DNA of 64,000 nt. Source: Lytechinus pictus (taxonomy: Eukaryota). The notes beneath the pieces were generated by a model. It saw only the letters and a program-made list of their open reading frames with translations. It searched no databases and had not been told where the DNA came from. Each line of letters starts with the position of its first letter. Within the stretch, counting starts at the first letter, position 1. A program made the position numbers and the translations under genes. This document shows, one piece after another, positions 28,226 to 48,961 of this stretch. The stretch lies in assembly GCF_037042905.1 (NCBI RefSeq), contig NC_087248.1, forward strand, positions 10,850,001 through 10,914,000. The letters run 5' to 3'.

Positions 28226-28358
28226 CATGAAACGCTCCCCTGAACAGAATTGAGGAATGAAACAACCCCGATCTATTTATTTTTTTCATTGGGGAAAAGG
28301 GAAGTTGTATAATGATTTCAATATCAAAACTATATGAAGCTTGACATCCAATCCCATC

Positions 28359-30473
28359 TTATTCGAGATAAATGCGTTGGATATTCCGGAGGGACCCCTC
28401 TGACGCAAACATCTTAACTTTCTCTTCTACACTGCCCTCATAGTACTCCTTGAACGCCAACGATTTGTTCCAGTAGTAGGAGCTCTGCCGATCACCAATG
28501 AAGGATTCTACCACTTGTTGGTTGTCGTAGTGAAGGAAATCATCTTCGCGATCGCATTCGGCATATTCTTGGTATTGGGTGGCACTTGATGTTTCACTAC
28601 TTGAGACCAGAGACGTGTTGTTGTCATCTGTACCCTGCGATGAATCTTCGTATACTCCAGAGTAGCCATCTGAACAACTGCCTTCAGGATCAACATCATC
28701 CTTCAGTTTCTTCAGCTCGCTAATATCTTGCTTCGGACGTGGTGGAAGAGGTTTGGCAGAGGACTTTCTGCGGACTGTGCAGTTGCGAGGCTGCTCATAG
28801 ACGGGCTCTTCAGAATTGCTGCATTTTGGGTTAGGGAAGATTCCTTGTTGAAGGTTTGTAAACTGAACTGTGTCCGGATGCCTGTTGAAGGGTAGCCGAC
28901 CTTGCCTCGTTGCCCTCTGTATGATCAGGACCAGTGATATGGAACACATCACAAGCACAAAGCCAACACTAACCGCAATCAGAAGCATCCAGAAGATATC
29001 CCAGAAGTCAAAGGAGGAATCTGCAGCTTTTGTAGGTTCACTTATTCGCAATCTGGAAGTTAAAGAGGCTGTAACTTTGGTGGTTAAGAGAGACAGTCTA
29101 GATACCTGAGATGATGTCTTCATAGGACTCCCAGTTGTAGCTCTGTCGACATTTGAAGTAAACGTACAGGACTTTCCTTTGACCGATGCTCCATTATTTA
29201 TTTCACACGTCACAACATGAGGGTCTCTTCCAGACAGAGAGTTATTTGGCAATTCATATAAGTCTCTCTGTAACCATGGCAATATTTCCTTCAGATTGCT
29301 GCTGTTGCTTTCCTGAACTGGATTTCCATCTAGGAACCATGTAAGGAAAAGACTCGTCTCATTTCTGTCAATGAATGCACAGGTAAAGTGATATACCCCT
29401 TTGGCGCGGGAGTGGAAGAGATATATCCCTGTGTCAATATCGGCTACACCATGCTGGTTTCTTGATGAACATTCGTTTCCAGAATTGATGAGAGGGCTAC
29501 CAAATATGATCTTCGACGTATTATGGGAAGTGCCGATTGTGTTCATTGCTGTACATGTAACATCGACACTAAAGTTTCTAAATCCAACGTGTGCTAGTGG
29601 TATGGAAATGTTCTGTTCAGTTGACCCGCAGGTAGAAAGGGCTCCCTCTGGTAAGCATAACCACCTGAATACATCTACTGGCGGATTAGCATCTACCAGA
29701 CACTGGAGAGATATTGATCTCGTCAAAGATGGTACCAGTATTTCAGAATATCTTGGGCTCACCTCAACTTTGGGTCGGTACAAGACCTCATATGGACCCA
29801 AAGAGCAGTTGGATTGGCGTCCTGGGAAGTTCGAGTTTGTCACGACGCAATGAATCATCTCCCCCTGAAGCCTTCGGTCAATGGTGACCATCCAAGACAA
29901 AGAACACACCTCCTGGGATAGAACTGTGTGATGAAGGGCTCTTCGGTTGGACTGCTCCCATGTCATGTCCAATGGGAGGTTGCATCCAGGTACCTCACAG
30001 CTAACAGTCACTGTGCTGCCAACTGCGACTGCGAGATCGTCTTGGGCATCGCAAATCAACTCTCCTTCTCCTGGAAAGTGCACAACATCCAACTCTCCGA
30101 AATCAGACGAAGCAATCATTATTCTATCTCCTCCCAAAAGTAAAAAGGTGCATCGGTATGCACCATCCAGGTCTCTAAGTGCCCCTTGGATGGTCAAGTT
30201 CGATGTGATCAAACCATTATTGAAATGCGTGTCAACATGGATGAATCCTTGAGGATAGAGAATCTCACTTTTTCTAGTTTCCCAAAATGATGTTGCAGTC
30301 TTTACGTCGGACCTGATTTGACATTGAAGGGTAATGTTTTTTCCTTCCTCTACGCTGTTGCTGCTTGGGTTAATATCAAATACAATAGAAGCATCACATT
30401 TATAACCGTATGGGGACAAAATGGTGTATATCAACAGGAGAGTTTGCAATGAGAATCCAAAAGACGATTGCAT
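28359..30473 (-). CDS. Type I membrane IgSF receptor A: signal peptide, 4 Ig-like domains, S/T stalk, TM, ~180-aa Tyr/Pro-rich tail; single coding exon
   Basis: 739-codon ORF from TTG at 30578. Likely start is MQSSFG at 30473; an alternative ATG lies at 30539. Ig motifs: EEGKNITLQC..W..SNLTI..DGAYRC; VTVSC..MTW..IHC; ISLQC..ANPP..FRW..VTCTAMNTIG; FTC..LTWFLDG..VTCEI. TM WMLLIAVSVGFVLVMCSISLVLII. Tail contains EPVYEQP, KPLPPRPK and GYSGVYED. Confidence 0.85.
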   Translation of the reverse strand: MQSSFGFSLQTLLLIYTILSPYGYKCDASIVFDINPSSNSVEEGKNITLQCQIRSDVKTATSFWETRKSEILYPQGFIHVDTHFNNGLITSNLTIQGALRDLDGAYRCTFLLLGGDRIMIASSDFGELDVVHFPGEGELICDAQDDLAVAVGSTVTVSCEVPGCNLPLDMTWEQSNRRALHHTVLSQEVCSLSWMVTIDRRLQGEMIHCVVTNSNFPGRQSNCSLGPYEVLYRPKVEVSPRYSEILVPSLTRSISLQCLVDANPPVDVFRWLCLPEGALSTCGSTEQNISIPLAHVGFRNFSVDVTCTAMNTIGTSHNTSKIIFGSPLINSGNECSSRNQHGVADIDTGIYLFHSRAKGVYHFTCAFIDRNETSLFLTWFLDGNPVQESNSSNLKEILPWLQRDLYELPNNSLSGRDPHVVTCEINNGASVKGKSCTFTSNVDRATTGSPMKTSSQVSRLSLLTTKVTASLTSRLRISEPTKAADSSFDFWDIFWMLLIAVSVGFVLVMCSISLVLIIQRATRQGRLPFNRHPDTVQFTNLQQGIFPNPKCSNSEEPVYEQPRNCTVRRKSSAKPLPPRPKQDISELKKLKDDVDPEGSCSDGYSGVYEDSSQGTDDNNTSLVSSSETSSATQYQEYAECDREDDFLHYDNQQVVESFIGDRQSSYYWNKSLAFKEYYEGSVEEKVKMFASEGSLRNIQRIYLE

Positions 30474-30894
30474 TCTTCTAATTTTGCAATTCAAGCTAAA
30501 ACAATTGAACACTGCTTTTCCTAGAGTTTTCGCCATCATCAAACAAAGTGTTAAGAGCCAAATAAACGGTTCCGTCAATATTCTGTAAAACTTAAGTTAA
30601 GTTCATTCTCTATACGAGGAAGATGTACCATGGCGATGATGAAAAAAAAAATCGTCAAATTTCCACTGACCAAACTCGCTAGGAATATTTCATTCTCTCC
30701 TCGAAACTCTTTCAAGTGGAAATAAGCTGAACCCAAAAGAGATTGATGGAGGTTTGAAACCGATCTTCCCCATAAAACTGTTTTGAAGTTCTGCATATTG
30801 ATTAGTTTTTATGGCGATGACCATTCTATTTTGATTTATTGGTACCATACCAGTTTCAAAACAAGATCAACGTCAGACGTTGATTAAAAGCTTA

Positions 30895-31090
30895 GATTAA
30901 TAGCTCAGTCGGTAGAGCGGGGGATTCGTATTCCGGTGACCCGGGTTCGATTCACACTTGGTGCGCTATTGCCCTTTGGTAAGGCATTAATCCTCATTAC
31001 CAGGTCCTTCGGAGAGGACCTTAAGCCGTCGGTCCTCTGGTTGCTTGCTTACAAGCATTCATGCTTTCTTAGCAATCAGGTAAAAAATCC
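30895..31090 (+). mobile_element. tRNA-derived SINE
   Basis: A box tagctcagtcgg and B box ggttcgattc, followed by a non-tRNA body (gccctttggtaaggcatta...). Confidence 0.7.
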
Positions 31091-32535
31091 CAACCAATAT
31101 ATTACCTAAACATTTCGGATGGCCGTATCGGAAAGTCGATGCATTGTGACATTGAATGGTGTTTACATTAATTGAACATACGTAAAAAATAAGTAGTGTA
31201 TATTTTAACGAAGGAAACAAACATACGGTACACGAAAATGCATGCAGACGGGGCCGCACTGCCTACATTTTGCACAAATTGAAATATTAAGCGCTTATTT
31301 TTTTCGAAGCCGTTCGAACTGCGTTATTTCTTTTATACCTTTATTTTTAAATTGTTCTCTTTATATGGGTGTCTATTTCTTGCAACCATAGGAAATTTTA
31401 ATAGTTGTTATGCCAAATTCAAAGTCAAGGCGTATGCCCAACTTTCCACCTTTTAGTGTGAAAACGAGCATTTCTTGTTGCAAATAATGATAAAAAGGTG
31501 CTTTTTTGCACCTTTTTCACTTATAGGGTGCAAAATACAACTCCATAAGGTTGGTACAAGTGCCATTTAAGGTTGAAAAAATTGTGTATAATGTTTTATC
31601 GTGAAATTTGAAAGAAGTTGAAAAGTGTCAGAAAAAATTGCCCCCCCCCCCTCCAAACGAAAATATGTTCAGAGCCGCCCCTGCTTTTACTTTTTAAATG
31701 TATGTTAATCTAATTTGTAAAATATTCACGCACAAACACTCTGTATGGGTTATGCTTTTTCAACTGGTTAAGTTTTTTTTTTTTTTTTTTTTTTTGGGGG
31801 GGGGTTGTTGTCCATTTAAAAAAAAAACATCTTTCTCATCACAAAATAAGAGATTAAAAAAAAGTGCAGCATATTTTTCATTTAGAGAAAATCATAGGTG
31901 ATCGATCGTGTACGTGTACATGCAGTGGATCTTATGCGTGTATCCGGTGCGTTGGTGTACAAACAAATGGTGCCAAACAACACGGAGGCAGTGCGCGCGC
32001 ACACTGGACATAATTTTCAATAAGCTAGGGAGCGAGTTACGGTATAGCATGAGTTTACAGTTTAAGACCTTAACAACCCTTTCTGGCAAAGTCCAAAACT
32101 TCATGAAGATAGACAAGACATACACCCTTGTATAGTTGTAATAAATTATGTATTTTGCTGTTCGTTTGTACTTGTGCTTGCGATTTGATAAATGTGTTCC
32201 AAAATATTAACGAAATTAATGAAATTGCTAGTCGAAACCATATGGTATAAAATGTAGTTAACCTGTCTACAATTCAATAAAAAGTCATTTAACTTAGATC
32301 ACTTTCTCAAGAGTGGAAAATGTTCTCTCACTAATTTACACACTCCAATTTTATCAGTAATGCGTATCGTGCATACACAGAGGGACTAGATCTTTCATCA
32401 TCCGAGTCAAATTTTGACAAATAATAGAATCTGCATTATCTAATTTGAAGGTAGGGGAGAAAACTAATTATTACGATTGTTGAATTTAATTGTACGAATG
32501 TGCCAGATTGCAACATCAGCGCGCAAAGGTTTAAA

Positions 32536-32690
32536 GGTGATGTGGCCGAGTGGTCTAGGCGCCTGGCTGACACTTGAAAGCCCGCGGTTCGATCCCCGGC
32601 CACAGCACCTCAGTCTTCCCGAGAGCAGTGCATTTAATTGACTTTGCTCTTTTATCCTGTATTCAAATAAATGGAAATGCTATATGCATT
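32536..32690 (+). mobile_element. tRNA-derived SINE
   Basis: A box tggccgagtgg and B box ggttcgatccc, followed by a non-tRNA body. Confidence 0.65.
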
Positions 32691-33419
32691 TTTTTATAAA
32701 TGTTTGTTAACATTGATTTTATCGAGAACATCATTAACAATCAACTAAAAAACACGTAATTCGTGTGAAAAGACCCTTTCACAACCTGACCATGCATCAT
32801 AGGGAAGTTACAAATTGATGCAGAGGTTCGAGGTTCGAACCCTGGTCACGTCTTTCGGATGGTGACGTTAAAGGTCGGTCCCAGACGTAAATAATCATAT
32901 ATGATTGATACACTTCTGACAAAAACTCAAATACATACATACATGACCATGGCAACATTTGTGACTAATTGGTGACATAATATTTTGCACAAGATACGAA
33001 TAGATAAATGACACTGCCACCTCCAAATTCCCTTTTGGGGCGCCCACATCGTCCCAAAAGCCGACCCCAATCCACTCATCACAACAAATCATATAGTTGT
33101 TATCAATCATTACAAACATACCCTTCGATCCTCGTTGAGAGAAAAACAAATCATATTCAATATTTACAATCTTAATCTTACAAATACCATAATTTTGCAT
33201 ATCTTAGTCAAACATCAAAGTTCGCCATGAAATCTGTAAGTGCTCTTTAGATTTTCACGTGATTGTTATGACGAAATGACACCGACATGGAATTGGAGGG
33301 AAATGGATTTTGACATTATACAAGATACTACTCAAGGGATCTATGTGTTCACAGTCATGAAAATCATATATCAATCACAGTGAGTTGGGATACTCATTTT
33401 AGAGGCTTCAAATTAGACG

Positions 33420-34938
33420 ATGGTATGTATTTCTTTTTCTTCTATATTTCTGCATCAAATAAAATATTGTAATTGATAGTCAAATCTGTGAAGACCATTT
33501 TATCAACCACTGTTACCCCTACTTGTTTTCTGTATCTGTAGCTGAAAAGTTAAATCATTCCATATTGGTATAATTGTATTCTTGCTCAATAAACCTAGTT
33601 CAGAGGTTATCGCTTGCACGTATATGTATATATGTTTGTTTCATTATAATTCAGCAAATTAAAATCGGAGAAAGACGGAGAAAAACGAAATATCAAATAA
33701 AACAGCATTCCTAAGACGTTGCCATATAACACCATCGGTTATTCATGATTCACTATAGGGTTTTATCTTAGCCATATCTGTATCTCAATTTTAGTTTTTG
33801 TTAAGTATCTATGCTGATCAGTGATTTTCTCAATTATGAACTACAATCCACTCCATTTCTCCTATTTCAGGAACGTCGTCATTATCAGCATGCACTGGTT
33901 TCAAGGAATTCCTTTTTGTGTCACAAAATCGTTACCATGGTTACTGTCTTTATCATCATATCAGTCAATCTGAGACAAACTGTTGTCGCTGATGAGGTAT
34001 TCCGTCTCGGGAATGATGCAATTATCGAATTTTCGTATTTATTTACTGATGATTATAAACACTGTTGGGAGATCTTTAGAGTGGGCATCAGTGATCCGTT
34101 CAATATCAATGGAACTATGAAACCAGATGCTCTGAATCCCTCACAAAGAGAGCGATTTACTGTTAGCGCTATGTGGGGGACAGATTATTTGGGTGCTCAT
34201 CTGCATATTCGCAACATCACGAAATTAGACAGAGGTGTATATATATGGGCTGTGAAGAGCCATGGGAGTGGAGTAGAACCCTCGGTCTCAACATTTGATG
34301 TATTTGTAGATGTTATAGTACCACCGGGAAGAGCACGATGTGTAATACGTCTATCAGTTTATTCATCTAACTGGCGTGAAGTTCATTGCGTCGCAACAGT
34401 AGAAAGTGATAGATATGATGGAGGGGTACAGCTCGTCTGTTACCAGGATAGCGAGAAGGCAACATTTCAGAGTGCACCTCTTGAAACATCAACCCATGTG
34501 AAGGGTGTATTTTGGATGAATGCAAAGCAAGCTATTAGGTGCTGTTCGCATGAAGGTAACTTCGTGAAGGTTCCAGGAGATTGCAATGACTTTATAAAAG
34601 ACGCCCTCATTCATGTCATTGAACCTGATGTTAGACGATCGACGACAAGAGTACCGCTCTCAACAACTTTCAACTTCGTAATTGATCGTGAAAAAACTTG
34701 GTCTGTGTCACCCAATGAGAATGAAATTACCAGTTACTCTGCTACATCTAAAGTAGAAACTGATTCCTCCAATCAATGCGTTTGTCCAAAAAATATTCCA
34801 AAATATTCTTTCTACATACCCTTGATCATGTTGATAGTGACATTTATTTTATTAATAATTTCCTTCGTTTTTAATATGAAATTCGTGTTAAAAAATAAAA
34901 ATAAAACGGGACTCGAGCACAACAAAATTAACAAGTGA
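33420..34938 (+). CDS. Short IgSF membrane protein C: signal peptide, disulfide-less V-like domain, Cys-rich second domain, stalk, TM, short basic tail
   Basis: Predicted exon 1 ends with ATG at 33420-33422, followed by GTATGT. Acceptor tttcag|GAA at 33871 is in frame with ORF 33811-34938. Motifs FRLGNDAIIEF..W..RERFTVS..LHIRNITKLDRGVYIW. TM YSFYIPLIMLIVTFILLIISFVF. Confidence 0.8.
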
Positions 34939-36310
34939 ACCAACCGACGTGATGCTGAAGGTATATTCCACCATACGACTACGTATAGTTTTTCCAGAAC
35001 CCTATATTAACTATTATTTCGTAATGGAATGAGCTATCAGGAACAGAACAGTGTTCAATCTCCCCGAAACCTTTAACGGCCATTTTCTTCTATTCTGCAG
35101 CTTTCAAATAACCTACTGTACGCTGCGCATGCTGATATTATATGGCATTCCGGGTATGGCATCCGTCATCCGTTCTTCTGCTGCCATGGCTGCCCTAAGA
35201 ATGTTTTCATCAACATTTGAGCTTCATTCTATTTCAGTGACTATAGTACTACATTCTACCTTCATGGCCTGAGAAACAAAAAAAGCTTGATATAGCTGCG
35301 CTATCTTGGAGTTTACAAAATGGCTACCGCAAATACGGTTTCCTTATTCAACCGCCTCTCATTAGCATGGTGATCGTGGTGATAAGATTTTTTCAGCCAA
35401 AGTTCCCCTTCGTTACCTCTTTCATCAAAACAGTGAAGTGTCTTTAGAAGAGACGACTTGAAAATGAACCTTTAAAAAGTAATAACCTTTTCATCAAAGA
35501 GAACACTAACCAACAACGCAAGTCTTGTTCTCACGAATCACACTCCTAAATAATGTCTTATTTATTTGAGGGCCTACATTTATGGTGAAATCTATAATCC
35601 TTTTCACGTATCCCGGTATAGCAATTTATTTAAAAACAAGTTGCGGTGTATTTTATTTATTTTTATGAATAAAAAAATCAAAGAAATAATAAAATTAAGT
35701 AATTGAAGAGATGTAAAGCACGACGAATTCGTTTTGATCACTTTCTTCTTTGAAAATCGGCATCATAATATTTGTGCCCACCAATTTTTGCAAACTTTAT
35801 GTAAATGGACAGTGCATGCACACTCGTAACTTTTGGTTTTCAATAAAACTGACAACTCATAGAAAAGATCGAATCCTTATAACAAATGTCCGAATATAAA
35901 TATCCCCATTTTGTAAATATCTAAATCGCCAGGACTTTCACAAAGTATAATCTGTTTATGGGACAGATTTTTTCATTCTTTCTGAGTGCAAATCTGATAA
36001 TAAAACTGATTTTCTGAAACGTGTGTGTGTGTGTGTTTATGATCACGAAATTGCCTCTTTTTGCGAAGTAATTGTGAGCGTAATGTGGGTTGTGACCAAA
36101 TTATCTACATTCATATGGATGAGTGCTTAAGTGTTAAGAAAACAGTGAGCGTGAAGTTGATTTGAACGTGCGAGAGTATGATAGTGGGTGGGTGCATTAT
36201 GTATGTCAGATATAGGTATACATTTCCATAATTCAAGAGGGCGCTGTTGGACATACGCGCTCGCTTCAAGCGGCGCCAGCTTGCTGTCCATTGAAACTAT
36301 ACGTCGCTTA

Positions 36311-36475
36311 TACCTTGGTCACATTTGTTCTACGGCGGCCGTACGGCGAGTCGAAAACAGCCGTTTTATTGGTTTTAATTCAAACCACCTATATGTAGTT
36401 GGAAAAAAAATGTTAAAAAACGGCTGTTTTCGACTCGCCGTACGGCCGCCGTAGAGCAAATGTGTGACCAAGGTA
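36311..36475. mobile_element. Palindromic MITE (copies at 38879-39043 and 43400-43557)
   Basis: taccttggtcacatttg..tacggcggccgtacggcgagtcgaaaacagccg is mirrored at the right end. Confidence 0.8.
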
Positions 36476-36655
36476 TTACGCAGATGCTCATTAGAGGTAT
36501 TTTCTGATTACATACAATCATGCATCAAAAGTTGTGGCTCTTTAATTTCAGCAATACAATCGTTTGCATGGTTTGGGTAGAAATGAAAAACATCACATCT
36601 TTCGCTTTTTATTTCAATGTTTACAGAAACAACGATCGGTTTCCCTCTCCGCACC

Positions 36656-39240
36656 CCCGGGGGGGGGGGGGGGGGGGGCACGTGCCTCCTATGCCCCCCC
36701 CCCCTGGATCCGCGCCTGCATGAAACGCTCCCCTGAACAGAATTGAGGAATGAAACAACCCCGATCTATTTATTTTTTTCATTGGGGAAAAGGGAAGTTG
36801 TATAATGATTTCAATATCAAAACTATATGAAGCTTGACATCTAATCCCATCTTATTCGAGATAAATGCGTTGGATATTCCGGACGGGAGGGACCCCTCTG
36901 ACGCAAACATCTTAACTTTCTCTTCTACACTGCCCTCATAGAACTCCTTGAATGCCAACGATTTGTTCCAGTTGTAGGAGCTCTGCCGATCACCAATGAA
37001 GGATTCTACCACTTGTTGGTTGTCATAGTGAAGGAAATCATCTTCGCGATCGCATTCGGCATATTCTTGGTATTGGGTGGCACTTGATGTTTCACTACTT
37101 GAGACCAGAGACGTGTTGTTGTCATCTGTACCCTGCGATGAATCTTCGTATACTCCAGAGTAGCCATCTGAACAACTGCCTTCAGGATCAACATCATCCT
37201 TCAGTTTCTTCAGCTCGCTAATATCTTGCTTCGGACGTGGTGGAAGAGGTTTGGCAGAGGACTTTCTGCGGACTGTGCAGTTGCGAGGCTGCTCATAGAC
37301 GGGCTCTTCAGAATTGCTGCATTTTGGGTTAGGGAAGATTCCTTGTTGAAGGTTTGTAAACTGAACTGTGTCCGGATGCCTGTTAAAGGGTAGCCGACCT
37401 TGCCTCGTTGCCCTCTGTATGATCAGGACCAGTGATATGGAACACATCACAAGCACAAAGCCAACACTAACCGCAATCAGAAGCATTGTTAAAAAATAAA
37501 AATAAAACGGGACTCGAGCACAACAAAATTAACAAGTGAACCGACGGGATGCTGAAGGTCTATTCCACTATACGACTACGTATAGTTTTTCCAGAACCCT
37601 TTGTTAACTATTATTTCGTAATGGAATGAGCAATCAGTAACAGCACAGTGTTCAATCTCCCCGTCACATTTAACGGCCGTTTTCTTCAATTCTACAGCTT
37701 TCAATTAGCCTACGTTGCACATGCTGATATTATATGGCATTCCGGGTATGGCATCCGTCATCCGTTCTTCTGCTGCCTTATATAAGAATGATTTTATCAA
37801 CATTTGAGCTTCATTCTATTTCAGTGACTATAGTACTACATTCTACCTTCATGGCCTGAGAAACAGAAAAAGCTTGATATAGCTGCGCTATCTTGGAGTT
37901 TACAAAATGGCTACCGCAAATACGGTTTCCTTATTCAACCGCCTCTCATTAGCATGGTGATCGTGGTGATAAGATTTTTTCAGCCAAAGTTCCCCTTCGT
38001 TACCTCTTTCATCAAAACAGTGGAATGTCTTTAGAAGAGACGACTTGAAAATGAACCTTTAACAAGTAATAACCTTTTCATCAAAGAGAACACTAACCAA
38101 CAACGCAAGTCTTGCTCTCACGAATCACACTCCTAAATAATGTCTTATTTATTTTAGGGCCTATACATTTATGGTGAAATCTATAATCCTTTCCACGTAT
38201 CCCGGTATAGCAATTTATTTAGAAACAAGTTGCGGTGTATTTTATTTATTTTTATGAATAAAAAAATCAAAGAAATTATAAAATTAAGAAATTGAAGAGA
38301 TGTAAAGCACGACGAATTCGTTTTTATCACTTTCTTCTTTGAAAATCGGCATCATAATATTTGTGCCCACCAATTTTTTCAAACTTTATGTAAATGGACA
38401 GTGCATGGTTTTCAATAAAACTGACAACTCATAGAAAAGATCGAATCCTTATAACAAATGTCCGAATATAAATATCCCCATTTTGTAAATATCTAAATCG
38501 CCAGGACTTTCACAAAGTATAATCTGTTTATGGGACAGATTTTTTCATTCTTTCTGAGTGCAAATCTGATAATAAAACTGATTTTCTGAAACGTGTGTGT
38601 GTGTTTATGATCACGAAATTGCCTCTTTTTGCGAAGTAATTGTGAGCGTAATGTGGGTTGTGACCAAATTATCTACATTCATATGGATGAGTGCTTAAGT
38701 GTTAAGAAAACAGTGAGCGTGAAGTTGATTTGAACGTGCGAGAGTATGATAGTGGGTGGGTGCATTATGTATGTCAGATATAGGTATACATTTCCATAAT
38801 TCAAGAGGGCGCTGTTGGACATACGCGCTCGCTTCAAGCGGCGCCAGCTTGCTGTCCATTGAAACTATACGTCGCTTATACCTTGGTCACATTTGTTCTA
38901 CGGCGGCCGTACGGCGAGTCGAAAACAGCCGTTTTATTGATTTTAATTCAAACCACCTATATGTAGTTGGAAAAAAAATGTTAAAAAACGGCTGTTTTCG
39001 ACTCGCCGTACGGCCGCCGTAGAGCAAATGTGTGACCAAGGTATTACGCAGATGCTCATTAGAGGTATTTTCTGATTACATACAATCATGCATCAAAAGT
39101 TGTGGCTCTTTAATTTCAGCAATACAATCGTTTGCATGGTTTGGGTAGAAATGAAAAACATCACATCTTTCGCTTTTTATTTCAATGTTTACAGAAACAA
39201 CGATCGGTTTCCCTCTCCGCACCCCCCGGGGGGGGGGGGG
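36656..39240. repeat. Young tandem duplicate of ~28176-36660 carrying a 5.9-kb internal deletion
   Basis: 36660-37486 matches 28176-28988, and 37487-39240 matches 34886-36660. Junction agaagcat|tgttaaaa. Confidence 0.9.
36779..37486 (-). pseudogene. Truncated copy of receptor A (TM plus cytoplasmic tail only), open 235-codon ORF
   Basis: Near-identical to the last ~209 codons of receptor A. The ectodomain is deleted, and a 4-bp insertion near 36882 alters the C-terminus. Confidence 0.75.
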
Positions 39241-39766: not shown

Positions 39767-40867
39767 TCCGCACCAAACCAGATCACTCCCTTAATAATCG
39801 AGATATAAAATACACCCCTGATAACCTACTGATTCAAATTAAGTTAAAATAAAAATGATAAAGTAATAATGTACATAAAATTATGCACCTTAACCTCATC
39901 AAATACATTTGTAATCTTTCATTTTCATTACTCATTAGATATTGATCACGAAATTCTGTTATCAGATTATCACATATGCTCTTTGACACGAATCACATGA
40001 CGAAAGCGACTAAATTTATTTCTAAATACGTAGATTGGAGGGAAGTCAGTTACGATTTAGGGAATCACAGCAATGAAGTCGTTATGAAGAGAACGAGATA
40101 GATCCTGATCGGATTCAACTTCAACAATCCCTGAGAATTATAAAATGGTATGTTTTTTCCTTTCTTTATCTCTACATTTATCACTGTGGAAATGAAAACT
40201 TTACTTTTGAATCGATTTTATTCGACAACAGGCCTGCCTATATGAGATTAAAAACAGAGAATTGTTTTCATAACCTAAGATTTTTGTGTTTCACTGTTAT
40301 TCAAAATTCTTGGAGTGTTTCAGGCAGGGGTATATTCAAGTCCTGTACTTCCAGAGTCACGAGGCCGCTGGAGAAAACATTATCCAAAATAATTTGTACA
40401 CATACTCGGACCGAGGCAAAGACCAATGAGGGCAAAAATGGCCTCGAAGGTAGCCTCTTGTCGAGGCCCTGTCGGCTGCTTTCCGATCGAACATGGCGAA
40501 GCAAGGGAGAGAGAGCGAAGCAGAGCGCCGCGCGCGCCAGGCCTAGAAATCCCTCGCTTCGCTCGGGAAGCAGCCGCCAGGGCCTCGACAAGAGGCTACC
40601 TCGAAGGCGGCCTCGTATACATCCCTGGATTCAAGGCGACTACGAGACACATTATGTTCTTGCGATAGCTCCTACCTGCCTAAAGCTGCCAAAAATTAAA
40701 ACATTAAAACTACAAACATGTTCATCATATGTTCTGCTATCTAGCAAATTGACTATTGTAACTTCCTATAGTCATTCAAATAGTTGTTTTAACTCTTAGG
40801 TGATGTCTAATCTTCTCAATAATCATCACCTTCATTGTCACGTTTTACTCTTGCAGGAACGTCAATT

Positions 40868-41947
40868 ATGGCCTGGCTCCAGGATGCAGTTTTCTTCAAT
40901 AGATGCACTGTCATTTCTATAATTATTACATTAGTCTATCTGAGACAAACTTTCGGGCAGTCCACGAATTATAAATATCGTCTCGGATCAGATGCCAACA
41001 TCCCATTTTCGTATGTATTTACTGACGATTCTCAGCACTCCTGGGAAATCTTCAGAGTAGGCATCCATGACCCATTTAATATCAATGGAACCATGAACCC
41101 GGATGCTTTGAATCCAACCCAAATGGGTCGAATTATCGTAAGCGCCACATGGAGAGCAGGTTCTTTAAGTGTTAATCTGCATATTTTCAACATCTCAGAA
41201 TTAGACAGAGGTGTATATGTTTGGGTTGTTTCAAGTCATAGAAGAAAGGTCAAACGGGAGGTGAGAACATTCGATGTGTTTCTTGACGTAATTCGTCCAC
41301 CTAGTAGAGCAGTTTGTTTTGTTTCCATATCTCCGTATGATGCTGGTTTACGAGAGGTCCACTGTCAAGCAAACGTGGGAAGCGACGGGGCTGCTCAACT
41401 CATTTGCTACCAGGATGGTGAAAAAGCTACCTTTCAGAGTGCACCTGTTGTTTCATCTACCAAAGTAACTGGTGTCTTTTGGATGAATGTAAAGAAGAAT
41501 ATCCGATGCTGTTCTCATGAGGTTAACTATGTAACGGATCCCGGGGAATGCAAGGACTTTACGCGATCCGCCACAATTGAGTCAACATCAACTACAAAAC
41601 CAGTAACACCCATCTCAACAACTCTCAACATACTAATGAGTAAAGGGAAGACAGTGTTAACTGAACTCACAAATGACAGCAAACTTGTCACTGATTCTTC
41701 CACTTACACTCCAACGACATACGGCGATCATTATATCTACAAAGAATATACCATCAATCATATTACAGTTGTCTTTATCAGTCTATTTGTAATATCATCG
41801 TGTGCGTTGATAGCAACCCTATGTCTTATACGTGTCAAATACAGACCTCGTAAAATGAAGATATTAAAGGAATCTTCACAAGTGGAGATGCAACCGATGA
41901 ACCCAGATGGAAGAAGACAAGAAGGCCTGACGGAGACACAACCTTAG
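40868..41947 (+). CDS. Short IgSF membrane protein D, paralog of C
   Basis: ORF 40835-41947 with first ATG at 40868. Aligns with C over both domains (RLGSDANIPFSYVFTDD..WEIFRVGI.DPFNINGTM.PDALNP; LDRGVYVW; CYQD.EKATFQSAP; GVFWMN..IRCCSHE). TM ITVVFISLFVISSCALIATLCLI. Confidence 0.82.
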   Translation: MAWLQDAVFFNRCTVISIIITLVYLRQTFGQSTNYKYRLGSDANIPFSYVFTDDSQHSWEIFRVGIHDPFNINGTMNPDALNPTQMGRIIVSATWRAGSLSVNLHIFNISELDRGVYVWVVSSHRRKVKREVRTFDVFLDVIRPPSRAVCFVSISPYDAGLREVHCQANVGSDGAAQLICYQDGEKATFQSAPVVSSTKVTGVFWMNVKKNIRCCSHEVNYVTDPGECKDFTRSATIESTSTTKPVTPISTTLNILMSKGKTVLTELTNDSKLVTDSSTYTPTTYGDHYIYKEYTINHITVVFISLFVISSCALIATLCLIRVKYRPRKMKILKESSQVEMQPMNPDGRRQEGLTETQP

Positions 41948-42234: not shown

Positions 42235-42304
42235 CCACACACACACACACACACACACCCACTCACACCCACACTCACCCACCCTCACACACACACACAC
42301 ACAC
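42235..42304. repeat. (CA)n microsatellite
   Basis: Direct reading of the sequence. Confidence 0.9.
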
Positions 42305-43351: not shown

Positions 43352-43605
43352 AAGCCTTAAAATCATCATTTTGCACGAACAAATTTCTGCGAGCTTTACA
43401 CCTCAGTCACATTTCCCCTACGGCGGCCGTACGGCGAGTCGAAAACAGCCGTTTAAACATTTTTGGACCAGCTACATATAAGTGATTTGAATAAAAAATT
43501 AAAACGGCTGTTTTCCACTCACTGCTTGGCGCCGTAGGGGAAATGTGACTGAGGTGTAAAGCTCGCAGAAATTTGTTCGTGCACAATGATGATTTTAAGG
43601 CTTTA
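43351..43605. mobile_element. Nested palindromic MITEs
   Basis: Outer arms aagccttaaaatcatcatt.tgcacgaacaaatttctgcgagcttta and their inverse enclose a copy of the 36311 family. Confidence 0.7.
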
Positions 43606-44194
43606 AGCGTAATATTCGTTAAATAATATACTTCCATCTGATAGATGAGACCGAATCCAAAATGCAAAAAAAAAAAAAATTGTAGTACGCATGGAATGTG
43701 TGTGTATGTGTGGGGGGGGGGGAGGTGGGTACGAGTGTGTGCTTGTGTTCACGAAGTTGCAACTGTCTGGGTATAGATTGTTTCGCGTGATTTGGATAAT
43801 GACCTATCACATGTATGTACAGTAGAGTGTTTTAGAGGACAGTGCGCGTGGAGATAATTTGAGTGTGGGTGAGTGTGATAGTGAGTCGATTGATGACTTA
43901 TGTCATAAATTTGTTTTATGCATTCTACCACGTTTCTTTAACATTGGAATATGAATGCATTTTTTAGGGGGGGGCGGTAGAGAGAGAGGAGAGAGAGTTT
44001 AGTTTCAATAATATTCAAGGGGTGATTTTCGTTGGGTTACTATGCGAGAGTGTGCGCCGTGGATATAAAATGCAATAAATTATGTAACACAAAAGGGAAA
44101 CTGGGTCATGACAGATATATTATACCTGTCATGACCCAGTTTGATATTGATGACAGAATTGATCATTGCAGTCATCGTAGCTACTCGGTAGATA

Positions 44195-44373
44195 ATGTCT
44201 AATTTTCTCAATAATCATCATGCACCTACATATTCACGTTTTACTCGACAATCAGGAACGTTTATTATGGCCTATAATTAGTCTACCTTAGACAACTTTC
44301 GGGGAGCTCAAAAATTACAAATTTTGTCTCGGATCAGAAGCCAACATCCCATTTTCGTATGTATTTACAGACG
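44195..44373 (+). pseudogene. Decayed 5' fragment of a third C/D-family gene
   Basis: Matches 40804-41027 (atgtctaat.ttctcaataatcatca..cacgttttactc..caggaacgt..attatggcct..tctcggatcaga.gccaacatcccattttcgtatgtatttac.gacga) with deletions, then similarity stops. Confidence 0.8.
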
Positions 44374-45287
44374 AGGGAGTGCAGCAAGGAAAATATTTGG
44401 CCTCCAAATGTGTTAACAACTTACTCCATTGATTAGCCGTTAGCAACAACTTATTCCCTTGATTATCAAACCATATTTGTAGATTACCTTTGTAAAAGGT
44501 CCATAATCATGTTAACATCCCCCTTTCCCTTTCTATGTATCGATATATTCATCTGTATTTCTACCTATTCATCTTTTCATCTCTCTATCTCACCCACTCT
44601 CTGTCTCCTTTTTTCTCTTCACCCATCCAACACACTCTCTCTTTGAGAATCCCATTCCTTGTTTCCACTCTCTTAATCTGTTTATCCATAGTTCATATTT
44701 AAACTACCATGCCTCTAAGTATTCAAATTGTGCATCTCCCTCATCCACATCTCTTTGAAATAAAAATAGTCGTATTAAATGCAATGTACCATATTTTATT
44801 GATGGATTATAAAAAACGTGCCTCCTCGATTTTTTTTCTTCACATTATTATTAATCAAATTTCGTTTTCCACTTGCCATTGACCGTAAAAAGAATTACAA
44901 TTTGGATTTTGTCACCATACTTGGATAGTAAAATGTGCTCGTCGATCTAAAACAAGTAGTGTCTATTTGCATATCGAACAATAATTCAGATAAATGCTTA
45001 AGAATAACTGGGAAGTTATATATATTTTTTTCTTAGTAACCTTGCTGGATAATCGTTGATAAATTATATATTAAGGTAGCATTACCATTCAAATATTCTA
45101 AGGACATGAAAGGTAATACCAACCAAGACGTTCGATACAATACATCGTACTTATATTACGGTGACGTACACCTACTACGGCATTATGATACAATATCATG
45201 ATTACATGAAAAATTACGTAATCATGAATTGCATACAAGAGTCTTGTGTCTGGTGGCTCTGACCCTCACTTTTGAAACAGATCATCA

Positions 45288-45470
45288 CGATCGTATGACA
45301 AGCCGTTTTAACATTTATTCACATTTTCCGATATCAAGAATTCGATTTCTTGATATCAAGAATTCAATTCTTGAGCCGTTTTAACATTTATTCACATTTT
45401 CTGATATCAAGAATTCGATTTCTTGATATCAGAAAATGTGAATAAATGTAAACGGCTTTCCATACGATCG
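45288..45470. mobile_element. Small MITE with internal 21-bp repeats
   Basis: TIRs cgatcgtatgacaagccgttt / aaacggctttccatacgatcg, with internal gatatcaagaattcgatttctt units. Confidence 0.65.
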
Positions 45471-46675
45471 CACATTACTTTCATTATGATAAGCAGGAAA
45501 TTCGTCCAAACTGTACAGCACTCAACCCAGGCGAGGTGAGGTACCAGACAATGTTTTTTGTGATAGGTAACGAGATAAACTACGCTTTATAATTGATTTT
45601 TTTTCGTAATTACTATATACAAACTACCAAGTGATTAAAGGGTTTTCACCGCGATGACATAGTTATGTATATGCATCATGAACGGGCCTACAACTATTGC
45701 TTAAATAATATGAAAATAGATTGCTACGATATTATAAGAGTAATGAATATAAGCTGGCAACTAAATATAGTTATCATGGGCGCTGAATTAAACAAAAGAG
45801 GTGTTAATTTGGATTAAAAAGTTGGAATCAAGAATGGTGAATTATTACCTCTCGATGAAGCATCGCTTCCAATTTTAAGATGGTTATTATTTTTCTACAG
45901 CCTGCAAAACCGGTTTCCAATTTTACAAAGTCCTGAGACTCCGCAGCTCTGAATAGATTTCTTAATTTGACAATCACCTTCTAAGTGGGTTCAGTTCTTT
46001 TAAAGCAGACACGAACCAGTAGCCTCCTCAAGTCTTTAACTACTCAAATCTGGCCAGGTTGCTAACCCATAATGCAACATTTTGAGCAGTGTAGTCTTGT
46101 CATTTAGGCCCATTGGAACGATATCACACCGATTCACTAGCTAATTTATTCTCTGTATTTCTCTGTATTATCAATAGTTATCTCAAAACGTATATTTTAA
46201 GACTAGCTATTTATAACACACAGTGAATGAGAGACACCACACAGTTCGCTCCCTCTTTAAAGTCAATGTGCCACAACCCTTTTAAATAGAGCCAGCGCAA
46301 GTACTATCTTACAAAGGTCATTTGTCCTTGCCGAGTATACAGTGCTTTGGTATGTAGTCTAACGATACTGTATGAACTATACATTTTGTAAAATACCTTA
46401 CAACATTCATATCACAACATTAAAGGTATGAAAACAAATAATGGTTTCCGCAATCTTAATTGCAATAAAGATTGAATGAAAATCGCAATTATCTCACAAA
46501 AGTTAATAAAACACAGTCTGAGTATTCTTTTGAATGGTATTATGTACCAAGGGTAACCATATAGTAAGCACAGACCATATGACCAAAGTTTCACTATGTG
46601 TTAGAGTTCCTTGGATATGTTGGAGCTCCGTGACACTTTAAGACAATCATCAGCAGTGGGAGAGAAATCATCAAA

Positions 46676-48961
46676 CTATTGTGCAGTCTGAAGATCATCC
46701 AGGTTGAGTGTCTTTGACTTGTAGTAAGCACTTTGTTTTTCGGAGGCTCCAAGATGGACCACATTCTTGTTCTCGTACACGTTTGATCCCGAGATCGACG
46801 AGATATCACTATACTCTCCTTCATACGAGTTGCGGATGTACGACGCTTCGTCCTCTGCGGTGGAAGAGTCCAAGCTTCCTGGACAACTGTAGCATGAGTT
46901 CCGGAACTCCATCGGCGGAGCAAATTTAATGGGAGACTCATCAAAATTATAAGAAGCGATGTGTGCTCGTCGGAGGTAATTCCTTGAAGCATTCCTAGTA
47001 TTGGTCATCTTGTCTTCATCAGGAGTGGCGTACAAAGGTTCGTCTTCCACGTGGCCATTGGTTCTAGGTTCTGGTGCAGGAGAGGATCGAGGTGGAGATG
47101 CAAAAGACCTGGCCAATGTCGTATGATACACACCGTCTAGCATATTCAGGGTGTTCCTTGATCGGCTCCAAACCTTCTGGAAAGCGAAGACAACACCAAT
47201 AACACAGGCAAGGAGAGTAAATCCTACGACGACGGCTACCACCAGCATCCAAGCCATATTCAGAGACCCTCTTGTAGAACTCGTCACCTCGTCAGAGTCT
47301 TTCAATATGGCAATTGCATGTGTCTTTGAAACTACAGTGGATGACTTTTCCTTGTCATGCCCTGCCGCTATTGAAGAATTCGTTAATATAAAGTTAGTTG
47401 TAGTTGGCGTCCTTTTCTCGGGGATGTTCTCAACATCTGTGACAGAAGAGGTCTGCAACATTTTATGTGCTGTTATTGGTGTTGTTGTGGTTGTTGTTGT
47501 GATTGTTGGTGTGTCAGTGTTTACTCGAGTGAAATAGTCGAACATGCAGGAAGCTATGTAATTTTCCTCCAGACTTCTTAGTTCGCATGCTACTACATGC
47601 ATATCTCTTTCGGTATTTTCAATTGATCTGCGAGGGAGCACCAATTGCCAATCGAGAGGGTCCTTAGCATTGTGATCATGATACTGGACACGAGAACCGT
47701 TGACGAACCATATAATCCGACTTACCCTGGGGACAATGTGGTAATTTCTGTTCTGAAATGAACAATGGAAGACATCACTCGTAGATCTCCATTGCCTTTC
47801 GACGACCAGACGATTATTTATGATTGTATCATTATTTACGGACTGTCCTTTCTCCTTATCATTCTCCAAGACTTCTTCTAACTCCTTAACAATGACCTCT
47901 CCGTTTGCAGTCAAAGAAGAGTTGGGACTCTTTTCGTTTTCTTGGCAAGTCTTCAGAGAAGACAAGTCAACGTAACTCACATCAATGGTAACAGTGTTTT
48001 CATCGCTACCCACAATATTCATTGCAGAACATGTCACTGTGACGTTTGCATCAGTACCTTCCAGATATGGCATTGTCAAGGATGCATCCAGATATGGACT
48101 GGAAGACTCACATGATTCGAAAGCGTCAGGGGGATCACAGGACCAGGACATTGCACTGACCTCGGGAAAGGAATTGGCTCTGCATCTCAGTCTTGTCTCT
48201 GAAATTATAGGAGGTGTCAACGAATCTCGGTCAGTCGTAACTTTTACACGAGGGGCATGGATGACTTTAAAAGGTGCTAGAGAGCAATTGACGTGTTCCC
48301 CTTCGAAGGCAGAACTGGTAGCAATGCAGCAGATTTCCCTATCATGGAGCTGTGGCTTTGCTCTCAGGGTATTCCTAATAAGTGTTTCGTCGGCATTTCT
48401 AGTTGAGTCCTGTGCCCCTAATAGGGTTGTAACTGAAGATTTCAGATGGCTGCACAACATCCATTTAAGAGTGATAGGTGGATTCGTATTCGGACCTTGA
48501 CACTCGATAGTAATTCTCTCATTTTCTCGGTAGAACGATTCAGGGTCCGGGAACCTTTTACACTCCATATCCGTTTCCTCCAAGAAGTACTGGACATTTA
48601 CTCCAACCAGAGGAGACGTTAGGGAGACATCTTCGCCATCTGCGAAACGGATGGATACCGTGCACTTGAAGTATTTCCGAGAATGGCGGTTTGTGTCCAG
48701 TAGTTGGAGGTTAGAGGTTACCACTGTCGAATTCAGTTCTTCGCTGATCAAGATAGACGCATCTAAATTCTGGTATGTTTTGTAGTTATCCGACCAAGTG
48801 ACTGACGCTGATTCGAATGGTGACCGAGCTTTTACAGAACAAACAAATATTGCAGGTCGACCCTCCTTCACAGTAACTCGGTAAGGCTGGATCAGAAATT
48901 CAGCCCGGTGTAAACCTTGTGCAGCAGGGGACATCAGGATGATCAAGAGCAGTAGCGACAT
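46676..48961 (-). CDS. Type I membrane IgSF receptor B (761 aa), divergent paralog of A; single coding exon
   Basis: Signal MSLLLLIILMSPAAQG. Four Ig-like domains colinear with A (KEGRPAIFVC..VTW..TSNLQL..FKC; ITIEC..LKW..ICC; LRCRANSFP..SWSC..VTCSAMNIVG; FHC..IWFVNG..VVACEL). Thr-rich stalk. TM WMLVVAVVVGFTLLACVIGVVFAF. Tail contains EPLYATP, YEGEYSDI and NVYENK. Confidence 0.87.
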   Translation of the reverse strand: MSLLLLIILMSPAAQGLHRAEFLIQPYRVTVKEGRPAIFVCSVKARSPFESASVTWSDNYKTYQNLDASILISEELNSTVVTSNLQLLDTNRHSRKYFKCTVSIRFADGEDVSLTSPLVGVNVQYFLEETDMECKRFPDPESFYRENERITIECQGPNTNPPITLKWMLCSHLKSSVTTLLGAQDSTRNADETLIRNTLRAKPQLHDREICCIATSSAFEGEHVNCSLAPFKVIHAPRVKVTTDRDSLTPPIISETRLRCRANSFPEVSAMSWSCDPPDAFESCESSSPYLDASLTMPYLEGTDANVTVTCSAMNIVGSDENTVTIDVSYVDLSSLKTCQENEKSPNSSLTANGEVIVKELEEVLENDKEKGQSVNNDTIINNRLVVERQWRSTSDVFHCSFQNRNYHIVPRVSRIIWFVNGSRVQYHDHNAKDPLDWQLVLPRRSIENTERDMHVVACELRSLEENYIASCMFDYFTRVNTDTPTITTTTTTTPITAHKMLQTSSVTDVENIPEKRTPTTTNFILTNSSIAAGHDKEKSSTVVSKTHAIAILKDSDEVTSSTRGSLNMAWMLVVAVVVGFTLLACVIGVVFAFQKVWSRSRNTLNMLDGVYHTTLARSFASPPRSSPAPEPRTNGHVEDEPLYATPDEDKMTNTRNASRNYLRRAHIASYNFDESPIKFAPPMEFRNSCYSCPGSLDSSTAEDEASYIRNSYEGEYSDISSISGSNVYENKNVVHLGASEKQSAYYKSKTLNLDDLQTAQ

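What the first reader, a model, noticed from the sequence alone, without database searches (positions are those of the whole stretch)
28359..48961. Two-family Ig-superfamily receptor cluster: long signalling receptors interleaved with short CD2/SLAM-like partners
Seen: within ~21 kb, two 4-Ig receptors with Tyr-rich tails (A and B, minus strand) bracket two short-tailed 2-domain Ig proteins (C and D, plus strand). A and C are head-to-head; D and B are tail-to-tail. A truncated A copy and a decayed third C/D fragment are also present. Paralogs keep the Cys/Trp framework but diverge elsewhere, A versus B especially. Established: clustered, rapidly turning-over IgSF genes are typical of immune and allorecognition loci (vertebrate CD2/SLAM, SIRP and Siglec clusters; Hydractinia Alr genes). 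Inference: this may be a lineage-specific receptor/ligand or paired-receptor recognition locus in an invertebrate deuterostome. I do not recognise either family as a named gene.
Basis: partly seen in the sequence, partly recalled or inferred. Interest (0 to 1): 0.85.

Follow-up and report, generated by a model that had tools for sequence, protein, structure and literature searches.

The report
Sea-urchin KirrelL-like Ig receptor cluster
This stretch of a sea-urchin chromosome holds four intact genes for cell-surface Ig proteins, two long with signalling tails and two short. They belong to a roughly 200-gene, largely unnamed expansion related to the cell-fusion gene kirrelL, and nobody yet knows what the long and short forms do or whether they bind each other.

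Summary
A (28359-30578, -) and B (46676-48961, -) are type I membrane proteins with three confident Ig domains, a weaker fourth, and tails carrying 11 tyrosines each. C and D (+) have a two-Ig ectodomain that Pfam misses but AlphaFold/Foldseek confirm, and short tails. The truncated A copy and the small D fragment are real.

The genome is Lytechinus pictus. Neither family is an orphan:
- A/B-class profile against the echinoderm KirrelL/Kirrel2L group: hhalign probability 99%, E 2e-18.
- C/D-class profile against the same group: probability 95.6%, E 1e-8.

Both are large families of single-coding-exon genes: about 35-40 A-class and at least 110 C-class. On the window's chromosome, 91% of A-class genes have a C-class gene within 20 kb.

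L. variegatus keeps the same A-C-D-B order. dN/dS is 0.40-0.59, so the genes are constrained but evolve fast.

A-class tails carry conserved YxxP and YxN motifs and no ITIM or ITAM. C/D transmembrane segments have no charged residue. Classical paired receptors are therefore not supported.

Receptor-ligand pairing and an immune role remain untested. The RNA lay and the complex prediction gave no answer.

Verdict: a new, undescribed branch of a known echinoderm Ig adhesion family.

The parts
28359..30578 (-). Gene A: long A-class receptor. Signal peptide, Ig D1-D3, a weaker fourth Ig-like domain, Ser/Thr stalk, TM, and a 186-aa tail with EPVYEQP (YxxP) and LHYDNQ (YxN). The first ATG is at 30539; the likely signal-peptide Met is at 30473.
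   Evidence: ORF; Pfam Ig domains; AF2 model; tail motifs; L. variegatus ortholog 86% identical
33419..33421 (+). Start codon of gene C at the end of a 5' exon, followed by a GTATGT donor. The intron runs to 33871.
   Evidence: Gene model P0001 begins M-ERRHY; sequence; the L. variegatus frame has a stop upstream of ERRHY
33872..34938 (+). Gene C main coding exon: a short C-class protein. Disulfide-less V-like D1, six-Cys C2-like D2, stalk, TM, and a tail of about 20 aa.
34886..36672 (.). First copy of a 1.8-kb tandem duplication (the 3' end of C plus downstream DNA).
   Evidence: blastn self-comparison, 95.9% to 37487-39240
36667..37486 (-). Fragment copy of gene A (TM, tail and 3' flank), 98.5% identical to 28175-28988. 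It has no ectodomain and its end is frame-shifted, so it is a likely pseudogene piece. It is absent from L. variegatus.
37487..39240 (.). Second copy of the 1.8-kb duplication. It begins with the last 17 codons of C.
40835..41947 (+). Gene D: short C-class protein, 54% identical to C, with a 38-aa tail. The start is either the ATG at 40868 or an upstream ATG exon as in C.
   Evidence: L. variegatus ortholog 77% identical
44295..44378 (+). Decayed fragment of a third C/D-type gene (28 codons, 71% aa identity to D residues 39-66).
46676..48961 (-). Gene B: long A-class receptor, 23% identical to A. The 169-aa tail carries EPLYATP (YxxP) and NVYENK (YxN).
   Evidence: the L. variegatus tail is 91% identical

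Best explanation
**What it is.** The locus holds four functional genes of a large sea-urchin expansion of KirrelL-like Ig-superfamily surface proteins, each encoded by a single coding exon. The family grew by local duplication and now has two architectures.

- Long form (A, B): a nectin/Kirrel-like ectodomain of three Ig domains plus a variable fourth, a stalk, a TM, and a long tail.
- Short form (C, D): a V-like domain without the usual disulfide, a cysteine-rich C2-like domain, a stalk, and a TM or lipid-anchor-like end with almost no tail.

**Shown:** family membership, folds, copy numbers, the interleaving on one chromosome, conserved synteny, and purifying selection.

**Inferred:**
- The long forms act as adhesion or recognition receptors.
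- Engagement of their N-terminal Ig domain leads to phosphorylation of the conserved YxxP and YxN tyrosines.
- That would recruit Crk/Nck-type and Grb2-type SH2 adaptors to remodel actin, as in Kirrel/nephrin signalling.
- The short forms would be non-signalling surface partners: ligands, cis-modulators or decoys.

Direct long-short binding is a sub-hypothesis at about 0.3. The biological setting is open: developmental cell-cell recognition or immunity.
For: **Family membership**
- A-class profile vs the KirrelL group: hhalign probability 99%, E 2.4e-18, 271 collinear columns over D1-D3.
- C-class profile vs the KirrelL group: probability 95.6%, E 1.1e-8.
- A vs L. pictus KirrelL by BLASTP: 23% over 304 aa, E 8e-5.
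- The best solved sequence relative of the A-class is SYG-2 (nephrin homologue), E 3.8e-17, followed by nectins and Necl.
- Fold matches: CADM4, KIRREL1-3, Roughest, SYG-1/2 and Necl-4 at TM 0.61.

**Copy number and linkage**
- 117 C-class matches and about 35-40 strong A-class matches in the genome.
- Median distance from an A-class gene to the nearest C-class gene is 6.8 kb, against 868 kb for random placement.

**Evolution**
- The A-class is monophyletic against the KirrelL group (100/100).
- The A(-) C(+) D(+) B(-) order is conserved in L. variegatus.
- dN/dS: A 0.40 (0.29-0.60), C 0.59 (0.39-0.97), D 0.55 (0.41-0.84).

**Tails**
- YxxP in 17 of 20 A-class tails and YxN in 11 of 20.
- C-class tails are 1-78 aa.

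**Known relative**
- KirrelL is a single-exon Ig protein needed for skeletogenic cell fusion (PMC8903837).
Against: - There is no expression evidence for any of the four genes. Three RNA-seq runs gave no reads on the A or C coding sequence. Those runs are probably from a sister species and were laid at 95% likeness, so the result is not informative.
- No binding evidence: the complex prediction scored 0.00, which counts as no answer.
- The tyrosine motifs are short and could recur by chance in Tyr-rich, acidic tails. Phosphorylation is not shown.
- About 40% of C-class genes sit in clusters on other chromosomes with no A-class neighbour. The short forms therefore cannot depend on a neighbouring long form.
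- C and D split recently (54% identity) but A and B anciently (23%). The A-C and B-D pairs did not arise as duplicated units.
Confidence: 0.6

Rival explanations
1. An immune or allorecognition receptor-ligand system. The long forms would be immune-cell receptors. The short forms would be self or partner ligands, comparable to nectin/Necl with CRTAM/CD226, to CD2/SLAM, or to Hydractinia Alr.
For: - Large, clustered, lineage-specific families.
- Protein divergence is much faster than for KirrelL: 77-88% against about 97% identity to L. variegatus over the stretches compared.
- dN/dS is 0.4-0.6.
- The C fold is closest to CRTAM, CD200, CD80, PD-L1 and butyrophilins.
- The CD2-like layout is present: a V domain without the disulfide plus a Cys-rich C2 domain.
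Against: - No ITIM, ITSM or ITAM in the tails.
- dN/dS is below 1 in every Ig domain, with no excess in D1.
- One-to-one orthologs and gene order are conserved between two species.
- The only studied relative acts in embryonic cell fusion (PMC8903837).
- No expression or polymorphism data.
Confidence: 0.2
2. The two architectures are neighbours only because both descend from one tandemly duplicating ancestor. They act independently, for example each through homophilic adhesion, with no long-short interaction.
For: - Both are remote relatives of the KirrelL group.
- Within clusters, the number of A-C adjacencies equals the random expectation: 44 observed against 39.9 +/- 3.9.
- Many C-only clusters lie on other chromosomes.
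- C/D and A/B duplicated at very different times.
Against: - 91% of A-class genes keep a C-class gene within 20 kb across about nine clusters and on contig C21.
- Members from the same chromosome region group together in both trees.
- Both observations are also expected from block duplication alone, so this rival is not excluded.
Confidence: 0.35
3. Classical paired inhibitory/activating receptors: near-identical ectodomains, a long ITIM tail in one form, and a short tail with a charged TM residue in the other.
For: A long Tyr-rich tail next to a short tail in adjacent genes.
Against: - The A-class and C-class profiles match only weakly (probability 62%).
- Domain numbers differ, 4 against 2.
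- No ITIM.
- No charged residue in the C or D TM segments.
Confidence: 0.03

Closest known systems
Echinoderm KirrelL / Kirrel2L / Hypp1164 / IgTM proteins (Ettensohn & Dey 2017, from memory; Khor & Ettensohn 2022, PMC8903837)
   Same: - Single coding exon.
- V-C2-C2 ectodomain with an extra Cys before and after D2.
- TM and a Tyr-bearing tail with a PxY(A/E)xP-type motif: Kirrel2L FPIYAKP, A EPVYEQP, B EPLYATP.
- Significant profile-profile homology.
   Different: - A/B form their own clade (100/100), carry a fourth domain, and are 20-25% identical to KirrelL.
- C/D have only two domains, no D1 disulfide and almost no tail.
- A-D evolve several-fold faster than KirrelL.
- They lie in large clusters on another chromosome.
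- PMC-specific expression is unknown.
Bilaterian IRM family: Kirrel/Neph/Roughest/SYG-1 with nephrin/Sns/SYG-2
   Same: - Best solved sequence match is SYG-2, and fold matches include KIRREL1-3.
- It is a two-family heterophilic adhesion system that signals through tail tyrosines to Nck/Grb2 and actin (established knowledge, from memory).
   Different: - IRM proteins have 5 or 8-9 Ig domains (with FN3 in nephrin), multi-exon genes and PDZ-binding ends.
- A ends in IYLE and B in TAQ.
- Gene numbers in IRM are small and the genes are not interleaved.
Nectin/Necl (3 Ig) with CRTAM, CD226, CD96, TIGIT (1-3 Ig)
   Same: - The A ectodomain fits Necl-4 and nectin-1 best (TM 0.59-0.61).
- C fits CRTAM, CADM1 and CADM4.
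- In that system, long and short homologous Ig proteins bind through D1.
   Different: - No detectable specific sequence relationship.
- No afadin/PDZ or ITIM/ITT motifs.
- Binding is untested here.
Drosophila Dpr (2 Ig) / DIP (3 Ig) and Beat / Side interactomes
   Same: - Two expanded Ig subfamilies of different length that form a heterophilic recognition code.
- DIP structures are among the top matches for A.
   Different: - Dpr/DIP genes are dispersed, multi-exon and mostly lack signalling tails.
- No homology beyond the Ig fold has been shown.
CD2/SLAM family
   Same: - V domain without the intrasheet disulfide plus a C2 domain with extra disulfides.
- Clustered genes.
   Different: - No CD2 or SLAM member among the top fold or sequence matches.
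- No ITSM.

Membership tests
Echinoderm KirrelL-like intronless Ig family | Sequence homology to KirrelL/Kirrel2L across the Ig domains | tested here: met
   hhalign: A-class probability 99%, E 2.4e-18; C-class probability 95.6%, E 1.1e-8. BLASTP A vs KirrelL: E 8e-5.
Echinoderm KirrelL-like intronless Ig family | Coding sequence in a single exon | tested here: met
   A, B and D are uninterrupted ORFs. In C only the ATG lies on an upstream exon. Paralogs are almost all open frames without stops.
Echinoderm KirrelL-like intronless Ig family | Three-Ig ectodomain, TM and a Tyr-bearing tail | tested here: inconclusive
   A/B meet it, with an added fourth domain. C/D do not: two Ig domains and a short tail.
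Echinoderm KirrelL-like intronless Ig family | Orthology to kirrelL itself, and expression in skeletogenic cells | tested here: not met
   The kirrelL ortholog is at C5:12.37 Mb, 98% identical to the Lv KirrelL piece. A/B form a separate clade. Expression was not testable.
Bilaterian Kirrel/Neph (IRM) | Five Ig domains, a PDZ-binding C-terminus and a multi-exon gene | tested here: not met
   Four domains. The C-termini are ...RIYLE and ...LQTAQ. Single exon.
Paired inhibitory/activating receptors (KIR, LILR, SIRP, Siglec type) | Near-identical ectodomains; ITIM in the long tail; charged TM residue in the short form | tested here: not met
   A-class vs C-class profiles: probability 62% only. 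No [SIVL]xYxx[IVL] in A or B, and no charged TM residue in C or D.
CD2/SLAM family | V domain without the disulfide plus a C2 domain, ITSM tails, and specific sequence or fold kinship | tested here: not met
   The architecture is alike. There is no ITSM and no CD2/SLAM hit among the top matches.
Allorecognition loci (Hydractinia Alr, Botryllus fuhc) | Extreme allelic polymorphism and positive selection in the distal domain | not testable with these tools
   Only an interspecies dN/dS was available: 0.29-0.45 in D1. No population data.
Heterophilic two-family Ig codes (nectin-CRTAM, Dpr-DIP) | Direct D1-D1 binding between the long and the short family | tested here: inconclusive
   The complex prediction scored 0.00, which is no answer and is not evidence either way.

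The most novel reading that the evidence does not exclude
The roughly 35-40 long and 110 or more short genes form a sea-urchin-specific heterophilic recognition code, comparable to Dpr/DIP or nectin/CRTAM. The tailed 4-Ig receptors would read the short 2-Ig ligands encoded beside them, and the pairs would co-evolve in cis on one chromosome. The code would specify immune or developmental cell-cell recognition.
Probability: 0.2. Interest if true: 0.8.

Novelty: new variant of a known kind. Interest (0 to 1): 0.55.

Why it matters
Sea urchins are known for very large innate immune gene families (TLR, NLR, SRCR), but no comparable Ig-superfamily expansion is widely recognised.

This work shows that one well-studied developmental gene, kirrelL, is the visible tip of about 200 single-exon Ig genes. 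That number includes a family of 110 or more two-domain members that Pfam does not detect at all. The long signalling forms and the short forms are interleaved on one chromosome.

If the two forms interact, this would be an independently evolved cell-recognition code in a deuterostome.

Lytechinus pictus can be bred and gene-edited in the laboratory, so knock-outs and binding screens are feasible.

If the two forms do not interact, the result still gives names and a family to about 150 genes that are now annotated as 'uncharacterized'.

Tried and rejected
**RNA evidence**
- Two run searches found no run on record as RNA that holds C or A.
- The single read-laying run (28950-34949; three RNA-seq runs and one contig set) gave zero depth on both coding sequences and depth only on SINE-like repeats.
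- I do not count this as silence, for three reasons. The runs carry another species label. The L. variegatus orthologs are only 87.5-93% identical in DNA, below the 95% threshold used. The conserved A tail, which probably held the shared words, lay outside the laid stretch.

**Complex prediction**
- A D1-D2 with C D1-D2 scored 0.00, which is no answer.

**Searches that reached little**
- The word-index protein search found only 2-4 relatives for A, C and the C-class alignment.
- The exhaustive profile search was needed to find the family.

**Data I could not get**
The C-class tree therefore has only 14 genes, and no formal co-phylogeny was possible.
- The ENA contig of P0003 gave no DNA.
- Ettensohn & Dey 2017 is not held. 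Its statement about a family of intronless kirrelL relatives is cited from memory.

**Readings rejected**
- Classical paired receptors, CD2/SLAM membership and bilaterian Kirrel orthology (see the membership tests).
- tRNA genes in the intergenic space: ARAGORN finds none.

**Earlier scan notes**
- The scan had noted similar things elsewhere in this genome (s1-317500, s1-320165). I did not check them.

Full report
**The observation**

The window has five long ORFs at the stated places:
- A: 28359-30578 (-), 739 aa.
- C: 33811-34938 (+), 375 aa.
- A 235-aa copy of the A tail: 36779-37486 (-).
- D: 40835-41947 (+), 370 aa.
- B: 46676-48961 (-), 761 aa.

Pfam finds Ig_3, I-set, Ig_2 and C2-set_2 in A and B, and nothing in C, D or the fragment. 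A and B are 23% identical over 619 residues (E 7e-34). C and D are 54% identical.

A self-comparison shows how the fragment arose. An 820-nt piece (A's TM, tail and 3' flank; 28175-28988) is copied at 36667-37486 with 98.5% identity. It sits between two copies of a 1.8-kb block (34886-36672 and 37487-39240, 95.9%). The fragment's last 35 codons are in another frame than in A, so it is a dead piece. A 28-codon remnant of a third C/D gene lies at 44295-44378.

C's reading frame upstream of ERRHY is intron. The gene model P0001 starts M-ERRHY. An ATG followed by GTATGT lies at 33419-33421, and a pyrimidine-rich acceptor ends at 33871. The L. variegatus frame has a stop just upstream.

**Whose genome**

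The nearest named protein is from Lytechinus variegatus, 84% identical to C. A Lytechinus pictus RefSeq protein of the same family lies on a contig of 32,991,779 nt, which is the length of the window's contig C4. The window is therefore L. pictus.

The flanks hold URB1/Npa1 exons (Npa1 E 1.6e-14) and an intronless rhodopsin-type GPCR.

**Folds**

The C ectodomain was modelled with an alignment of 14 family members. It forms two beta-sandwich domains at pLDDT about 90, then a disordered stalk and a TM helix.
- Foldseek against PDB matches antibody light chains, PD-L1, TCR and BTN2A1.
- Against Swiss-Prot models it matches CRTAM, CADM1/4, CD200, CD96 and CD80.

C and D are therefore Ig-superfamily proteins that Pfam misses.

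The family alignment explains the miss. In C and D, domain 1 has no Cys pair. It keeps the Trp and the D-x-G-x-Y motif, with Trp in place of the F-strand Cys. Domain 2 has six invariant Cys (PPGxAxC ... C ... CYQ ... FW ... CCS ... CxDF).

The A ectodomain was modelled with 23 sequences. It has three Ig domains at pLDDT about 90 and a fourth eight-stranded domain at 55-80.
- The best superpositions are Necl-4 (TM 0.61), nectin-1 and DIPs.
- Among Swiss-Prot models the best are CADM4, KIRREL1-3, Roughest and SYG-1/2.
- By sequence profile the best solved relative is SYG-2 (E 3.8e-17), followed by Robo, NCAM and nectins.

**The named relative**

A literature search led to kirrelL. It is a single-exon Ig gene needed for fusion of skeletogenic cells and is conserved in all echinoderm classes (PMC8903837). 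That paper's source data give KirrelL, Kirrel2L, Hypp1164 and IgTM protein sequences.

A 63-residue piece of L. variegatus KirrelL finds its ortholog in this genome on contig C5 at 98% identity. It also weakly finds several genes that A finds too.

Profile-profile comparison then shows:
- A-class vs KirrelL group: probability 99.0%, E 2.4e-18, 271 collinear columns over D1-D3.
- C-class vs KirrelL group: probability 95.6%, E 1.1e-8, from D1 into D2.
- C-class vs A-class: probability 62%, E 7.6e-5.

The tails also share a motif:
- Kirrel2L: FPIYAKP.
- Sea-star Hypp1164: ALYAKPDK.
- A: EPVYEQP.
- B: EPLYATP.

So the two 'families' are diverged branches of one echinoderm Ig family. From memory, Ettensohn & Dey 2017 stated that kirrelL belongs to a family of closely related intronless genes. 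That paper is not held.

**Size and layout of the expansion**

| Profile search of the genome | Result |
|---|---|
| C-class | 117 matches at E<=1e-5, over 100 of them below 1e-20, nearly all open frames of 280-410 aa; 69 on C4 |
| A-class | about 35-40 strong matches, 33 on C4 |
| KirrelL-like | about 45 further genes, mostly on C5 and C4 |

On C4 the two classes fall into the same clusters: 0.35-0.42, 0.60-1.01, 1.80-1.93, 5.59, 5.86-6.02, 10.0, 10.88 (this window) and 21.16-21.44 Mb.
- 91% of A-class genes have a C-class gene within 20 kb.
- The median distance is 6.8 kb, against 868 kb for random placement.
- Within clusters the two kinds are mixed as expected by chance: 44 A-C adjacencies against 39.9 +/- 3.9.
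- The one strong A-class gene on C21 also has a C-class gene 4.6 kb away.

The reverse does not hold. About 40% of C-class genes lie in clusters on C9, C10, C16, C19 and C11 without A-class genes.

The exhaustive profile search of 1.84 billion representatives finds 156 clusters at E<=1e-30. Sampled members come from L. pictus, L. variegatus, Strongylocentrotus purpuratus, Diadema setosum and D. antillarum. Nearly all are called 'uncharacterized protein'. The C-class is therefore at least euechinoid-wide and unnamed.

**Evolution**

The L. variegatus locus (CM031018.1: 27.24-27.27 Mb) has the same order and strands: A(-), C(+), D(+), B(-). Amino-acid identities are 86%, 84%, 77% and 91% (only the tail of B was covered). 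It has no A-tail fragment.

| Gene | dN/dS (NG86) | Bootstrap 95% interval |
|---|---|---|
| A | 0.40 | 0.29-0.60 |
| C | 0.59 | 0.39-0.97 |
| D | 0.55 | 0.41-0.84 |

dS is 0.13-0.20. No Ig domain exceeds 1, and D1 is not the fastest (A D1 0.45, C D1 0.36, D D1 0.29). KirrelL is about 97% identical over the 123 residues I could compare. A-D are therefore constrained but evolve several times faster.

In the A-class tree:
- The class is monophyletic against the KirrelL group (100/100).
- A and B join the genes at 9.997, 5.975 and 5.984 Mb (97/91).
- Branches are very long.

In the C-class tree:
- C and D are sisters (99/99).
- They sit with the genes at 4.13, 6.02 and 10.0 Mb (73/74).

Neighbouring regions are thus related in both classes, as block duplication predicts. 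The C/D split is much younger than the A/B split, so A-C and B-D are not duplicated pairs.

**Tails and likely mechanism**

A and B have tails of 186 and 169 aa with 11 Tyr each.

Across 20 intact A-class tails:
- A membrane-proximal Y-[E/D/A]-x-P is present in 17.
- A distal Y-x-N is present in 11 (A LHYDNQ, B NVYENK).

Both motifs are conserved in the L. variegatus ortholog and in the 65%-identical P0005. pYxxP is the Crk/Abl-type SH2 consensus and pYxN the Grb2 SH2 consensus. This is established knowledge; phosphorylation here is inferred.

No ITIM, ITSM or ITAM pattern is present.

C-class proteins end in a TM with 1-78 residues of tail, in a terminal hydrophobic stretch that resembles a lipid-anchor signal, or with no anchor at all. 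The C and D TM segments have no charged residue.

The most economical reading is this. The long forms are Kirrel/nectin-like adhesion receptors that signal through phosphotyrosine adaptors to the cytoskeleton. The short forms are non-signalling surface proteins. Whether the short forms are ligands of the long ones is open.

**What could not be settled**

- Expression. The lay is uninformative for the reasons given under Tried and rejected.
- Binding: the one complex job gave no answer.
- Polymorphism: no data.

**Comparison and novelty**

The locus is not an ortholog of a conserved adhesion gene, and it is not a paired-receptor or CD2/SLAM locus by their defining features (see Membership tests).

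It is an undescribed, much larger and faster-evolving part of the KirrelL-like family, with a derived two-domain architecture. I rate it a new variant of a known kind.

The scan noted related things elsewhere in this genome: s1-317500, head-to-head intronless Ig receptors with a long against a nearly absent tail; and s1-320165, a single-exon Ig gene with a V domain lacking the Cys-Trp-Cys core. These fit the family described here, but I did not check them.

Noticed in passing
window 30900-31090, 32540-32610, 32800-32935: tRNA-derived SINE-like repeats lie in the A-C intergenic space. They are the only places with RNA-read depth in the laid stretch (about 100-400x, most reads only partly on them). 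ARAGORN calls no tRNA gene there.
   Followed up: partly
window 59857-60969 (-): Intronless rhodopsin-type GPCR, 370 aa (Pfam 7tm_1, E 1e-37).
   Followed up: partly
   Followed up: partly
L008 (C4:933116-935274), L010 (C4:896909-898994), L009 (C4:21421403-21423296): C-class genes often come as two different sub-types in tandem. One has the D1 Cys pair and one lacks it. Their ORFs lie roughly 50-100 nt apart or even overlap. Diadema gene models of 588-605 aa (P0008, P0011) hold two such units. It is unclear whether these are fused four-Ig proteins or merged gene models.
   Followed up: no
G000 C5 (0.05-0.16, 6.2-8.5, 12.3-12.4, 17.3-17.6 Mb) and C4 (8.28-8.69, 17.7-18.0 Mb): About 45 further single-ORF KirrelL-like genes of 437-1099 aa, including the kirrelL and kirrel2L orthologs. 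Together with the two classes this gives roughly 200 genes.
   Followed up: partly
window 26526-26748 and 26896-27118: Inverted repeat with 223-nt arms, 83% complementary, 147 nt apart, in an AT-rich stretch just upstream of the cluster. It is probably a small transposable element.
   Followed up: no
L038 (Logan contig of 2590 nt) and L059 (1468 nt), from neighbouring run accessions: Short contigs from an unidentified third sea-urchin species each carry a complete A-like (65% identity) or C-like (42%) reading frame with flanks. The sizes look transcript-like, but there is no poly(A) and no library record, so this does not prove expression.
   Followed up: partly
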